Below are positions 17,931 through 19,929 of a stretch of 64,000 nt of DNA, piece after piece. Numbering within the stretch: position 1 is the stretch's first letter; the number at the start of each line of letters is the position of its first letter. The stretch is taken from the IMG/VR virus record IMGVR_UViG_3300042010_000106, positions 62,001 through 126,000 of that record; one strand, given 5' to 3'. A program made the position numbers and the translations under genes. The notes beneath the pieces are model-generated. The model was not told the origin of the DNA, did not search any database, and saw nothing but the letters and a program-made list of their open reading frames with translations.

Positions 17931-18971
17931 ATGATGGATATTCTGCTGTATTGCTGCGTGGCTTTGTTGGGAGGTTACGCCGCTTACAAATACACTAACC
18001 ATGTGCAGCTCGCATGGATCGTTAGTGCTGCTGGTTCAATCGTTGCCGTTATCTTTTTCTACGTGGCCCTGTGGCTGTCTGCGTCTTCGTACGAAATCAT
18101 TAGCGGCACCGTGACAGACAAAGAAGTTGTTTACGATCCGACAACCGAATCATATTCGTGTGGTACGGATTCCAAAGGCAACAGCAAAACCTGTACGCGA
18201 ACCGTGCCGCGCTGGCGCTTTGACGTAGAAGCCGACGTAGGCAGTTGGTACGATTATTCCTACAGCCGCTGGAACGTGCCAAGCATTTATGAGAATGCAA
18301 AAATTGGCGAACCGTTCGCGAAAGAAAAAATGTTCATGAACTATCAGTACGTGAACGATGAAACGGTTTTGGTGAACAAGCTCGACGCGTACGAAGGCTG
18401 GTTGCCTGAATACCCAAGCGTTTACGAAGGCTACAAAGTTCATCGCGCTTTTTCGAATGTGGTCAACGTATCCGAACTGAATGCTGCGCTGGCGAAAGCC
18501 GAACAAGTGTGGGGCAAGAAATTCGGCGTGAACGTAATCGTCAACGTCGTGCCTGAAAAAGAAGCAGGTTTCGCCAATGCCCTGCGCAACAAATGGGTAG
18601 GCGGCAAAAAGAACGATGTTGTTTTGACTCTCTACGTCAACGCAGAACACCGCGTTACGAAAGCAAACGTTTTCAGCCGGTCTACCTCGACCAAGCGCAC
18701 GGATACGTTCGCCGATTTCAATACAACGCTTCGTGAAAACGCACAACGAATTGACACGCTCGCTACGCAGAAAATCATTGGCGTTATCGACGCAGCTTTG
18801 CCACTGTTCGAACGTGAAGACTTAGCAGAGCATGACTTCGGCGCCACGTCGTATAGCGCTGCGTGGTACATAAACGCATTGGGCATATTCGTTGTTTTGC
18901 TCACCTGTTTCGGAACTGTAAAGTGGTTGGGCGGGCAACGTAGTTTCCGCCGTAGCTCATGGGCACGCTGA
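17931..18971 (+). CDS. conserved phage membrane protein (2 N-terminal TM, large periplasmic domain, C-terminal TM)
   Basis: YSC...KTCTRT motif, W-x-GGKKNDVV motif, TM helices. Confidence 0.75.
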   Translation: MMDILLYCCVALLGGYAAYKYTNHVQLAWIVSAAGSIVAVIFFYVALWLSASSYEIISGTVTDKEVVYDPTTESYSCGTDSKGNSKTCTRTVPRWRFDVEADVGSWYDYSYSRWNVPSIYENAKIGEPFAKEKMFMNYQYVNDETVLVNKLDAYEGWLPEYPSVYEGYKVHRAFSNVVNVSELNAALAKAEQVWGKKFGVNVIVNVVPEKEAGFANALRNKWVGGKKNDVVLTLYVNAEHRVTKANVFSRSTSTKRTDTFADFNTTLRENAQRIDTLATQKIIGVIDAALPLFEREDLAEHDFGATSYSAAWYINALGIFVVLLTCFGTVKWLGGQRSFRRSSWAR

Positions 18972-19066
18972 TGAAAAAGCAAAAAGGTTTTACCCTGATT
19001 GAACTGCTGATTGTGGTCGCCTTCTTGTTGGTTGTTGGCACCTCGATCTACAAAGCAACTCACTAA
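18971..19066 (+). CDS. 31-aa type IV prepilin-like peptide (class III signal plus hydrophobic helix only)
   Basis: my translation MKKQKG/FTLIELLIVVAFLLVVGTSIYKATH*; TGATG coupling; below the ORF-track length cutoff. Confidence 0.8.
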   Translation: MKKQKGFTLIELLIVVAFLLVVGTSIYKATH

Positions 19067-19091
19067 TTACCCACGCAAGGAAAATGAAGTA

Positions 19092-19646
19092 ATGTTCAGC
19101 AAATACAAAGGTTGGATCGCTGCTGGTGTTATCGCCGTTTTGGCACTGATGGCAATCAGCATCAACAACACCGTGGTAACGCAAGAAAGCGGAATCATCG
19201 GAGCCAACAAAGCACGTCAAGCCACGCTTTCGAATATCAGTCAGAAAGTGAAGGAAGTTATCGGCGTCAAAAACATGAACGTCGAGGACATCCAGAAAAC
19301 CGTCAACGAGCAAATCAAATTGCGCGCTGGTGCGGACGGCATGAAAAACATGGTGCTGATGTTGAAAGAACACAACATTGCCCCGTCGCAAGAAGCCGTG
19401 ATCAAGATCATGAACATCATCGACACAGGGCGTGAAACTTTCCTGAAGCAAGAAAACATGATGACTGATCGTAAGACTGCTGCCTGTATGTTCCGCAGCC
19501 GTTTCCCGAACAATTTCATCATCAACATTATGGGCAGTGCCAAACTGAACATTGGTTGCTTCGACGGCCAAGACGATTACGCGCCTTTGATGAACGACAA
19601 GGCAACAGAATCGTTCAAGTCCGGCGTTGATGGCGGTCTGTACTAA
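19092..19646 (+). CDS. LemA-like membrane-anchored helical protein
   Basis: N-terminal TM then NNTVVTQESGI...; C-terminal RFPNNFII; AAGGA RBS before ATG 19092. Confidence 0.65.
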   Translation: MFSKYKGWIAAGVIAVLALMAISINNTVVTQESGIIGANKARQATLSNISQKVKEVIGVKNMNVEDIQKTVNEQIKLRAGADGMKNMVLMLKEHNIAPSQEAVIKIMNIIDTGRETFLKQENMMTDRKTAACMFRSRFPNNFIINIMGSAKLNIGCFDGQDDYAPLMNDKATESFKSGVDGGLY

Positions 19647-19654
19647 TCGGTAAA

Positions 19655-19682
19655 AAGTGGGGAGACTTTGGTTTCCCCACTT
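19655..19682 (+). terminator. stem-loop / probable terminator closing the membrane-protein unit
   Basis: AAGTGGGGAGAC-TTTG-GTTTCCCCACTT. Confidence 0.55.
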
Positions 19683-19701
19683 CCCGTTTGAGGGCAAGAA
19701 A

Positions 19702-19929
19702 ATGAACGTGAAAGAAGAGCTGCAAAAACGTGGCATCGTAATGACGGAATTGGAAACGTACCGTTGGGGTGATGGGCCATCCGGTTGTTCGAAAGAAGAG
19801 GGCTATAGCATCGCTCTTTCGGAATGCACGAAACAAGTAATTCTTCCATTGCTGGAACAAATCAAGGCGCTGGAAACTGGCCTGAATCGTTTGGCCGATG
19901 CTGCCCGTGTTGCGGGTGACAGACTATGA
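19702..19929 (+). CDS. hypothetical protein
   Basis: GAGG RBS. Confidence 0.6.
   Translation: MNVKEELQKRGIVMTELETYRWGDGPSGCSKEEGYSIALSECTKQVILPLLEQIKALETGLNRLADAARVAGDRL

What the first reader, a model, noticed from the sequence alone, without database searches (positions are those of the whole stretch)
18971..19066. Hidden 31-aa type IV pilin mimic: a headless prepilin
Seen: an ORF below the track cutoff encodes MKKQKG|FTLIELLIVVAFLLVVGTSIYKATH. It is TGATG-coupled to the upstream gene and has an AACTGTAAAG motif about 50 nt upstream. Known: a basic leader, Gly-1/Phe+1, Glu+5 and a hydrophobic helix make up the class III signal cleaved and methylated by PilD, and type IV pili are major Pseudomonas phage receptors. 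Inference: with no globular head, the peptide could poison or cap pilus or T2SS pseudopilus assembly, occupy PilD, or mimic the pilin feedback signal sensed by PilS. Any of these would give superinfection exclusion or loss of twitching.
Basis: partly seen in the sequence, partly recalled or inferred. Interest (0 to 1): 0.85.

Follow-up and report, generated by a model that had tools for sequence, protein, structure and literature searches.

The report
Phage mini-prepilin lacking a head
A clade of giant phages carries a conserved 31-35 residue gene that encodes only the signal peptide and membrane helix of a type IV pilin, most likely a decoy that sabotages the host's pilus or secretion machinery, though its function has not been tested.

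Summary
The ORF is real and sits where stated (18971-19066, +). It encodes a 31-aa peptide that passes the curated cut-offs of Pfam N_methyl and TIGR02532, and its start overlaps the upstream stop as TGATG.

It is not a one-off or a decayed pilin. A profile search found 8 distinct 31-35 aa clusters. All those looked up lie in the same slot of Lu11-like jumbo phage contigs, between a ~350-aa membrane protein gene and a ~190-aa "virion structural protein" gene. The predicted mature length is always 25-26 residues. G-1, F+1 and E+5 never vary. The motif codons carry near-saturated synonymous change with almost no amino-acid change. No relative has a full-length pilin in the slot, and 5 of 14 relatives lack the gene.

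Best reading: a prepilin-peptidase-processed, helix-only pilin decoy that poisons type IV pilus or T2SS pseudopilus assembly. This is inferred, not shown. Rivals are a mimic of the pilin-pool signal, a PilD sink, and a subunit of a phage membrane module.

The idea has a recent precedent. A 2026 paper noted untested ~60-aa truncated PilA-like proteins in virulent Pseudomonas phages. This family is a smaller variant, and automated pipelines already call and label it. The Pseudomonas host is only inferred from distant relatives.

The parts
18971..19066 (+). Mini-prepilin gene: 31 codons plus a TAA stop
   Evidence: ORF and translation. N_methyl and TIGR02532 are above their cut-offs. Eight homologous clusters were found; the six looked up, plus the window, L005 and L006, all lie in the same slot.
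18971..18988 (+). Leader peptide MKKQKG: net charge +3, ends in Gly-1, the predicted prepilin peptidase cleavage site
   Evidence: Direct reading. Leaders of all family members are basic and end in G.
18989..19063 (+). Predicted mature 25-residue peptide: Phe+1, Glu+5, a hydrophobic helix, then a short polar tail (YKATH)
   Evidence: Mature length is 25-26 in all 13 sequences. The first 12 codons show 8 of 11 synonymous against 1 of 25 non-synonymous differences between window and L005.
18959..18970 (+). Alternative in-frame upstream start (MGTL extension), giving the 35-aa form
   Evidence: IMG calls the 35-aa form, P0008.
18914..18923 (+). AACTGTAAAG: a recurrent, strand-specific phage motif, probably a promoter or regulatory element, lying inside the 3' end of the upstream gene
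   Evidence: Over-represented and often just upstream of starts. It is at the equivalent position in almost every Lu11-like locus, with or without the mini-pilin (L045 has it about 320 nt further upstream).
17931..18971 (+). Upstream 346-aa membrane protein (phrog_2087): two N-terminal TM helices, a beta-rich domain plus a TPM-like domain, and a C-terminal TM helix. The mini-pilin is translationally coupled to it.
   Evidence: AF2 model pLDDT 83. Weak Foldseek hits to the TPM proteins Psb32 and BA41.
19067..19091 (+). 25-nt spacer holding the AAGGAAAA ribosome-binding site (19077-19084) of the next gene and a relic (TTACCCAC) resembling the older C-terminal codons seen in L005
   Evidence: DNA alignment and flanking sequences.
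19092..19646 (+). Downstream 184-aa protein (phrog_1383, homolog of Lu11 gp349 'virion structural protein'): an N-terminal TM helix plus a helical bundle
   Evidence: AF2 model. No significant fold match.

Best explanation
This is a genuine phage accessory gene for a headless prepilin. The peptide is proposed to insert into the host inner membrane with its N-terminus in the cytoplasm. The host prepilin peptidase (PilD/XcpA type) would cut it after Gly-1 and N-methylate Phe+1. That leaves a 25-residue membrane peptide copying only the alpha1-N assembly helix of type IV pilins and T2SS pseudopilins. It keeps F1 and E5, the residues subunits use to dock onto one another, but has no alpha1-C or globular domain. 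It would therefore act as a dominant-negative subunit: it competes with host pilins at the assembly platform or filament base and terminates or destabilises polymerisation. The predicted result is loss of surface pili (and possibly T2SS output). That would protect the infected cell from pilus-dependent phages and reduce wasted adsorption of progeny. Shown here: the ORF, its motif, its conservation, its fixed length, purifying selection and synteny. Inferred: translation, PilD processing, the target and the phenotype.
For: - The motif passes curated cut-offs.
- There are 8 distinct clusters of 31-35 aa. The six looked up are on about 18 contigs from separate samples, always in the same slot.
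- G-1, F+1, T+2, E+5, L7, I8 and V9 are invariant across 13 sequences, while the second half varies. That is more conservation than a plain membrane anchor needs.
- Synonymous sites in the motif are near saturation with 0-2 amino-acid changes in most pairs.
- The start overlaps the upstream stop in 6 of 9 lineages, and a GGAGG precedes it in another.
- The tail was rebuilt by small duplications at least twice, yet mature length stayed 25-26.
- Precedents: a 17-aa pilin N-terminal peptide cuts pilus function and PhiCbK susceptibility by 77% in Caulobacter. The 30-aa inner-membrane protein PfsE blocks T4P through PilC. Prophage FimU copies enter the pilus, and ~60-aa truncated PilA-like proteins occur in virulent Pseudomonas phages.
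Against: - There are no expression or biochemical data. Every member is metagenomic, so there is no isolate and no known host.
- The two cultured relatives lack the gene.
- Nothing in the neighbourhood relates to T4P or T2SS.
- The gene shares a probable regulatory motif with a putative virion gene, which may mean middle or late expression. That fits early superinfection exclusion poorly.
- The peptide lacks Pro22 and everything beyond residue 25, so it may not be extractable from the membrane or accepted by the machinery.
Confidence: 0.45

Rival explanations
1. Signal mimic. The membrane peptide is read by the host's pilin-inventory sensor (PilS in Pseudomonas, PleC in Caulobacter, possibly FimS) as a full pilin pool. 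That would switch off pilin transcription or rewire surface and c-di-GMP behaviour, rather than touching assembly directly.
For: A 17-aa pilin N-terminal peptide is sufficient for PleC signalling and impairs pili. PilS and FimS sense pilins in the inner membrane. The peptide keeps the conserved alpha1-N and E5.
Against: From my own recollection of Kilmury and Burrows 2016 (not held in the library), the PilS response also needs Pro22, which is absent here. A transcriptional route is slow within a lytic cycle. The host and its sensor are unknown.
Confidence: 0.15
2. Subunit of a phage membrane module. The peptide works with its two constant neighbours, the TPM-like three-TM protein and the TM-anchored helical-bundle protein. 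The prepilin signal would serve only to insert and orient it.
For: Synteny is invariant and the gene is translationally coupled to the upstream gene. In one lineage, 21 of 22 nt of the leader match the 5' end of the downstream gene of another lineage, which indicates exchange between the two adjacent starts. All three products are predicted membrane proteins.
Against: The neighbour pair exists without the peptide in 5 of 14 Lu11-like loci and in the more distant jumbo-phage loci L012-L014. A plain anchor would not need invariant F1, T2 and E5 under strong purifying selection.
Confidence: 0.15
3. Prepilin peptidase sink. The peptide is an abundant substrate or product inhibitor that occupies PilD, so host prepilins and pseudopilins stay unprocessed.
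For: The leader, G-1 and F+1 form a complete recognition site. A cellular 40-aa N_methyl ORF sits directly upstream of a prepilin peptidase gene in marine contigs, hinting at peptide-peptidase pairing.
Against: PilD is catalytic, and a good substrate should be turned over rather than block it. Conservation of E+5 and positions 6-9 is not needed for cleavage (established knowledge from Strom and Lory 1991, recalled, not re-read).
Confidence: 0.1
4. A non-functional chance ORF, or the decayed remnant of a captured pilin gene.
For: It is very short, all members are metagenomic, and there is no expression evidence.
Against: Eight sequence clusters lie across deep branches of the clade with fixed length. 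There is purifying selection on the motif. No pilin head remnant follows the stop, which is 25 nt from the next gene. No relative carries a full-length pilin here.
Confidence: 0.03

Closest known systems
Prepilin-type N-terminal cleavage/methylation domain (class III signal peptide; Pfam PF07963, TIGR02532) of type IV pilins and T2SS pseudopilins
   Same: Basic leader, Gly-1, Phe+1, Glu+5 and a hydrophobic alpha1-N. It scores above both curated cut-offs. The best PDB sequence matches are N-termini of Geobacter PilA-N, MshA and PilA.
   Different: The protein ends at mature residue 25, with no alpha1-C, no Pro22 and no globular domain. No specific pilin or pseudopilin model reaches its cut-off. 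The gene is not in a pilus or secretion gene cluster.
Truncated ~60-residue PilA-like proteins of virulent Pseudomonas phages (noted in Sztanko et al. 2026, PMC12952977; probably the family of the 62-aa Nankokuvirus Ab03 ORF31)
   Same: Phage-encoded, with a prepilin N-terminus and no pilin head. They were proposed, untested, either to enter the pilus or to block its assembly. I found ORF31 independently.
   Different: Those are about 60 residues long. This family has half that length, only the membrane-embedded part. There is no similarity beyond the motif (tblastn E=0.2). The phage lineage differs: jumbo, Lu11-like.
Prophage FimU mimics (P-FimU) of F10-like P. aeruginosa phages
   Same: A phage-encoded pilin-family protein that gives protection against pilus-dependent phages.
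   Different: P-FimU is a full-length minor pilin that replaces the host subunit and leaves pilus function intact. The present peptide cannot supply a head domain.
PfsE of filamentous phage Pf4
   Same: A roughly 30-residue inner-membrane protein, N-terminus in the cytoplasm, that suppresses T4P and blocks superinfection.
   Different: It is unrelated in sequence. PfsE has a YAWGW aromatic cluster and binds PilC. It has no prepilin motif and is not expected to be cut by PilD.
CIP peptide, the first 17 residues of mature Caulobacter PilA
   Same: It shows that a pilin alpha1-N fragment alone is bioactive in the membrane and lowers pilus function and phage susceptibility.
   Different: CIP is an experimental fragment of a host type IVc (Flp-like) pilin and acts through PleC. 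The present peptide is a natural, separately encoded phage gene of type IVa/T2SS style.

Membership tests
Prepilin-type N-terminal cleavage/methylation domain (class III signal peptide) | Profile match above the curated threshold | tested here: met
   PF07963: 34.4 bits against 21.2. TIGR02532: 26.0 bits against 16.3.
Prepilin-type N-terminal cleavage/methylation domain (class III signal peptide) | Short basic leader ending in Gly-1, followed by a hydrophobic +1 residue and Glu+5 | tested here: met
   The leader is MKKQKG and is followed by FTLIE. G-1, F+1 and E+5 are invariant in 13 family sequences.
Prepilin-type N-terminal cleavage/methylation domain (class III signal peptide) | About 20 hydrophobic residues after the cleavage site | tested here: met
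   Mature residues 1-21 are hydrophobic apart from T2, E5, G17, T18 and S19.
Prepilin-type N-terminal cleavage/methylation domain (class III signal peptide) | Cleavage and N-methylation by a prepilin peptidase | not testable with these tools
   This needs expression in a host with and without PilD. A crude hydropathy scan found no ORF with more than three TM-like segments in the 64-kb window.
Type IV pilin / T2SS pseudopilin structural subunit | Full alpha1 helix (about 53 residues) plus a globular beta-sheet head | tested here: not met
   The ORF stops after mature residue 25. Reading past the stop gives only 6 more codons, and the next gene is a different protein family.
Type IV pilin / T2SS pseudopilin structural subunit | Match to a specific pilin or pseudopilin model above its cut-off | tested here: not met
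   The best hits are PpdD at 22 bits (cut-off 138) for the window peptide and GspH at 27 bits (cut-off 80) for L005.
Type IV pilin / T2SS pseudopilin structural subunit | Encoded with pilus or secretion machinery genes | tested here: not met
   The flanks are phage families phrog_2087 and phrog_1383 with no T4P or T2SS fold.
Phage truncated PilA-like proteins (~60 aa, Sztanko et al. 2026) | Phage-encoded with a prepilin N-terminus and no head domain | tested here: met
Phage truncated PilA-like proteins (~60 aa, Sztanko et al. 2026) | Sequence relatedness beyond the shared N-terminal motif, and comparable length | tested here: not met
   There is only a 23-24 residue motif match at E of 0.2-0.4 to Nankokuvirus ORFs. 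The lengths are 62 aa against 31 aa.
PfsE-like T4P inhibitors | YAWGW aromatic cluster and PilC binding | tested here: not met
   No aromatic cluster is present in the sequence (compared). PilC binding is not testable here.

The most novel reading that the evidence does not exclude
A natural, phage-encoded, minimal pilin helix of 25 mature residues is processed by the host prepilin peptidase. It then acts as a chain terminator or signal mimic for type IV filament systems. That would give a jumbo-phage clade control over host pili and possibly type II secretion with the smallest conceivable pilin. Similar helix-only or short-tailed prepilins appear to have arisen repeatedly in unrelated phages.
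Probability: 0.45. Interest if true: 0.8.

Novelty: new variant of a known kind. Interest (0 to 1): 0.6.

Why it matters
If the peptide really blocks type IV filament assembly, it defines the minimal part of a pilin that the machinery recognises. It would also be a ready-made natural inhibitor template for pili and T2SS. It would add a mimicry-based route to the known phage strategies against pili, which so far are binding PilB, binding PilC, and replacing FimU. The family offers about ten natural variants plus clean G-1 and E+5 controls, so the question is directly testable in laboratory Pseudomonas strains. The finding also shows that sub-40-residue ORFs in jumbo phage genomes can be conserved, selected genes.

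Tried and rejected
- **Decayed pilin:** rejected. No head remnant follows the stop, and none of 14 syntenic relatives has a full-length pilin. The slot is empty (about 30 nt) in HRDY3, L007, L008, L009 and L011, and holds an unrelated 61-aa ORF in Lu11.
- **Read-through or frameshift fusion to the downstream protein:** rejected. The frame offset between the two genes is 0 in 2 lineages, 1 in 4 and 2 in 3. The downstream gene has its own ribosome-binding site and exists alone in relatives.
- **Functional clue from the neighbours:** sequence searches against the PDB and Pfam found nothing. Structure models gave only weak TPM-domain hits for the upstream protein and nothing for the downstream one. 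My recollection-based guess that the downstream protein is LemA-like was not supported (2etd ranked 24th, E=2.4).
- **RNA element or tRNA at the site:** none found.
- **Prepilin peptidase in the window:** a crude hydropathy scan found no ORF with more than three TM-like segments.
- **Host assignment through bacterial genome contigs:** only distant homologs turned up, in candidate-phyla MAGs and one Variovorax contig, which is uninformative.
- **Searches that could not run:** The search for homologous proteins refuses queries under 40 aa. The Kilmury and Burrows 2016 paper and the Lu11 genome paper (looked up by a PMC id I recalled) were not retrievable.
- **Dedicated promoter for the ORF:** rejected. 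The AACTGTAAAG motif is at the same place in relatives that lack the ORF.

Full report
**1. The observation**

The upstream 346-aa ORF ends at 18971, so its TGA stop overlaps the ATG as TGATG. A second in-frame ATG at 18959 would add four residues (MGTL).

The peptide matches Pfam N_methyl (PF07963) at E=1.4e-8 and 34.4 bits, against a gathering score of 21.2. It matches TIGR02532 at 26 bits against 16.3. No specific pilin or pseudopilin model comes near its cut-off. A regex scan of all six frames found only this one canonical prepilin motif in the 64-kb window.

AACTGTAAAG lies at 18914-18923 and is a real recurrent element. There are 19 matches with at most one mismatch against 3.6 expected. 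All 16 copies of the core ACTGTAAA are on the + strand, and many lie a few to about 80 nt upstream of start codons.

**2. What the window is**

The window is part of IMG/VR contig IMGVR_UViG_3300042010_000106, 312 kb long. Its only cultured relatives are the jumbo Pseudomonas phages Lu11 and HRDY3, and they are distant: 38-41% protein identity in the flanking gene and about 71-73% DNA identity over the downstream gene.

The local gene order is conserved:
- a ~350-aa membrane protein (phrog_2087);
- then a ~190-aa protein annotated as a virion structural protein (Lu11 gp349, phrog_1383).

The mini-prepilin sits between these two genes.

**3. It is a conserved gene family, not a singleton**

A profile of three copies, searched against 1.84 billion representative proteins, returned eight distinct full-length clusters of 31-35 aa.
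- Each of the six clusters looked up is encoded in the same slot, on about 18 contigs from separate JGI, ENA and Logan samples. Cluster records list further contigs.
- Gene callers already predict the ORF. It carries a precomputed N_methyl hit, and IMG names it a prepilin-type N-terminal cleavage/methylation domain protein.
- All leaders are basic (net +2 to +4) and end in Gly. F+1, T+2, E+5, L7, I8 and V9 never vary.
- The predicted mature length is 25 or 26 in all 13 sequences.
- Two tail types occur: Y-K/V-x-T-H, and L-K-S/Q-C followed by two or three residues.

**4. Selection**

Over the 12 codons starting at Gly-1, window against L005 differ at 8 of 11 synonymous sites but only 1 of 25 non-synonymous sites. 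Other deep pairs behave similarly. Over the whole gene, pN/pS is 0.27-0.8 in all but one pair (window against L045, 0.97), because the second half of the helix drifts among hydrophobic residues.

Other signs that the ORF is translated and its length is constrained:
- The start overlaps the upstream stop (TGATG, ATGA or TAATG) in six of nine lineages. L044 instead has a GGAGG five bases upstream.
- In the window, L044 and L046, the codons after the stop still resemble the older tail and stop seen in L005 and L006. The 3' end was therefore rebuilt by small duplications at least twice, while the peptide stayed the same length.

**5. Phylogenetic distribution**

I built a maximum-likelihood tree of the flanking 350-aa protein. 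The gene is present in 9 of 14 Lu11-like rows, spread across deep branches. It is absent from the HRDY3 group (L001, L009, L007, L008) and from Lu11.

The fewest changes needed is two, which is compatible with an old gene lost twice. In the phages that lack it, the slot is about 30 nt of spacer, or in Lu11 an unrelated 61-aa ORF. No prepilin motif occurs elsewhere in those loci. A tblastn search of the phage collection listed neither Lu11 nor HRDY3.

**6. Rejected structural readings**

- No pilin head follows the stop. Only 25 nt separate it from the next gene.
- The frame relation to the next gene is not conserved (offsets 0, 1 and 2 in 2, 4 and 3 lineages), so programmed read-through or frameshift fusion is unlikely.
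- No Rfam family or tRNA overlaps the site.
- The long antisense ORFs over this region lie opposite genes that have clear homologs, so I treat them as shadows. I did not test this.

**7. The neighbours**

- **Upstream protein.** The AF2 model (pLDDT 83) shows two N-terminal TM helices, a beta-rich domain, an alpha/beta domain and a C-terminal TM helix. The only suggestive Foldseek matches are TPM-domain proteins: Psb32 (8c7i, E=8e-3) and BA41 (5anp).
- **Downstream protein.** It models as a TM helix plus a helical bundle (pLDDT 74) with no significant match.
- Neither resembles a pilus or secretion component. Both occur without the mini-prepilin in several relatives and in the more distant jumbo-phage loci L012-L014.
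- **An oddity.** In L044, 21 of 22 nt of the mini-prepilin leader match the 5' end of the downstream gene of L005 and L006. The alignment score is 19.5 against a maximum of 12 in 2000 shuffles. Many downstream proteins begin M-K-S-K-Q-R-G followed by a hydrophobic stretch. This looks like a prepilin leader but lacks E+5, and no member hits N_methyl. I read this as local recombination between two adjacent starts.

**8. Regulation**

The ACTGTAAA core lies 60-80 nt before the end of the upstream gene in almost every Lu11-like locus, whether or not the mini-prepilin is present (L045 has it about 320 nt further upstream). It overlaps the conserved T-V-K/N codons. If it is a promoter, it serves the downstream gene, and the mini-prepilin is simply the first cistron of that unit. 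Its timing is unknown.

**9. Mechanism**

Established knowledge of class III signal peptides (recalled, not re-read) is that Gly-1 is required for cleavage. Glu+5 and the N-terminal amine matter for methylation and for subunit docking in the filament core.

The family conserves exactly the first eleven mature residues and lets the rest drift. This argues that it must look like a pilin alpha1-N to a host partner after processing, and is not merely anchored in the membrane.

My preferred model (confidence 0.45) is a PilD-processed, dominant-negative subunit that competes at the assembly platform or filament base. Because it cannot contribute head-domain contacts, it would terminate or weaken type IV pili and possibly T2SS pseudopili. 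By inference, a chain terminator needs only a low incorporation probability per step to shorten a filament of thousands of subunits.

The rivals are:
- a mimic of the pilin-pool signal sensed by PilS, PleC or FimS (0.15);
- a subunit of a phage membrane module with its neighbours (0.15);
- a PilD sink (0.10);
- a non-functional ORF (0.03).

None is tested here.

**10. Comparison with what is known**

Phages are known to target type IV pili through Tip and Aqs1 (which bind PilB), PfsE (which binds PilC) and prophage FimU copies.

Sztanko et al. 2026 (PMC12952977) report, without testing, a family of about 60-residue truncated PilA-like proteins in six virulent Pseudomonas phages. They propose either incorporation into the pilus or inhibition of assembly. 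My tblastn search independently picked up Nankokuvirus ORFs such as the 62-aa Ab03 ORF31, probably that family. It also found 99-107 aa pilin-like proteins in Xanthomonas phage PhiXhv-15 and Acinetobacter phage Acibel004.

PHROGs holds several short families of unknown function with this N-terminus. Other viral contigs carry unrelated short versions, including a 40-aa one in a 353-kb contig.

The present family is the extreme case: only the membrane-embedded half of alpha1, in a different phage lineage. In Caulobacter, a 17-residue pilin N-terminal peptide is enough to impair pili and reduce PhiCbK susceptibility by 77%. So a helix-only peptide can be biologically active.

**11. Verdict**

Novelty is moderate. 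The general idea of a phage-encoded truncated pilin is already in print, and the ORF is already labelled by pipelines. But this minimal, deeply conserved family has not, as far as I could find, been described or tested.

Caveats:
- The host is unknown.
- All members are metagenomic.
- Expression timing is unknown.
- The key papers on PilS and on pilin mutagenesis could not be re-read here.

Noticed in passing
window 18914-18923 and 15 other + strand sites (e.g. 10708, 16163, 30496, 31568, 41693, 48105, 53344, 59650): AACTGTAAAG (core ACTGTAAA) occurs 16 times, only on the + strand, often 0-80 nt before start codons. It is at the equivalent position in almost every Lu11-like locus (L045 has it further upstream). 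It is probably a phage promoter or another regulatory element. The very short distances to some starts are unexplained.
   Followed up: partly
window 17931-18971: The upstream 346-aa membrane protein (phrog_2087) models with a domain weakly similar to the TPM-domain proteins Psb32 and BA41. It has conserved Cys77 and Cys88 and a GGKKND motif. Its function is unknown. It is conserved from the Lu11-like phages to the more distant jumbo-phage loci L012-L014.
   Followed up: partly
window 19092-19646; L005 4200-; L010 4281-; L044 3139-: The downstream 'virion structural protein' has an N-terminal TM helix. In many lineages it starts with a prepilin-like leader (M-K-S-K-Q-R-G, then S, A or F) but has no Glu+5. 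In L044, 21 of 22 nt of the mini-prepilin leader match the 5' end of this gene in L005 and L006.
   Followed up: partly
window 19067-19076; L046 3103-3116; L044 3109-3125: Directly after the stop codon there are relics of an older C-terminal coding end (codons like ...ACC CAC / ACC AAC TAA). This indicates repeated small tail duplications that kept the peptide length.
   Followed up: partly
L021 3001-3123 (= L050 2501-2623): An unrelated 353-kb viral contig encodes a 40-aa prepilin-only ORF in a region of many small genes. A sequence that reads YNTYIATKE in one frame lies just before this ORF and recurs once more in the locus. It may be an intergenic repeat.
   Followed up: partly
L051 895-1017 and L052 354-476 (TARA marine contigs): A cellular 40-aa N_methyl-only ORF lies about 30 nt upstream of a prepilin peptidase (A24) gene. 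It may be a natural mini-substrate or regulator, or a broken pilin.
   Followed up: no
L047 701-1000; L048 698-1021; L049 701-889; L020, L025, L026: Cultured and metagenomic phages encode 60-107 aa proteins with a canonical prepilin N-terminus and non-pilin tails. Examples are Xanthomonas PhiXhv-15, Acinetobacter Acibel004 and Pseudomonas Nankokuvirus Ab03 ORF31.
   Followed up: partly
L002 3728-3913 (Lu11 gp350): Lu11 carries an unrelated 61-aa ORF in the slot where the mini-prepilin sits in other clade members.
   Followed up: partly
window 18990-19736 (-) and 18632-19063 (-): Long antisense ORFs of 248 and 143 aa overlap the annotated + strand genes. They are probably non-coding shadows.
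   Followed up: no
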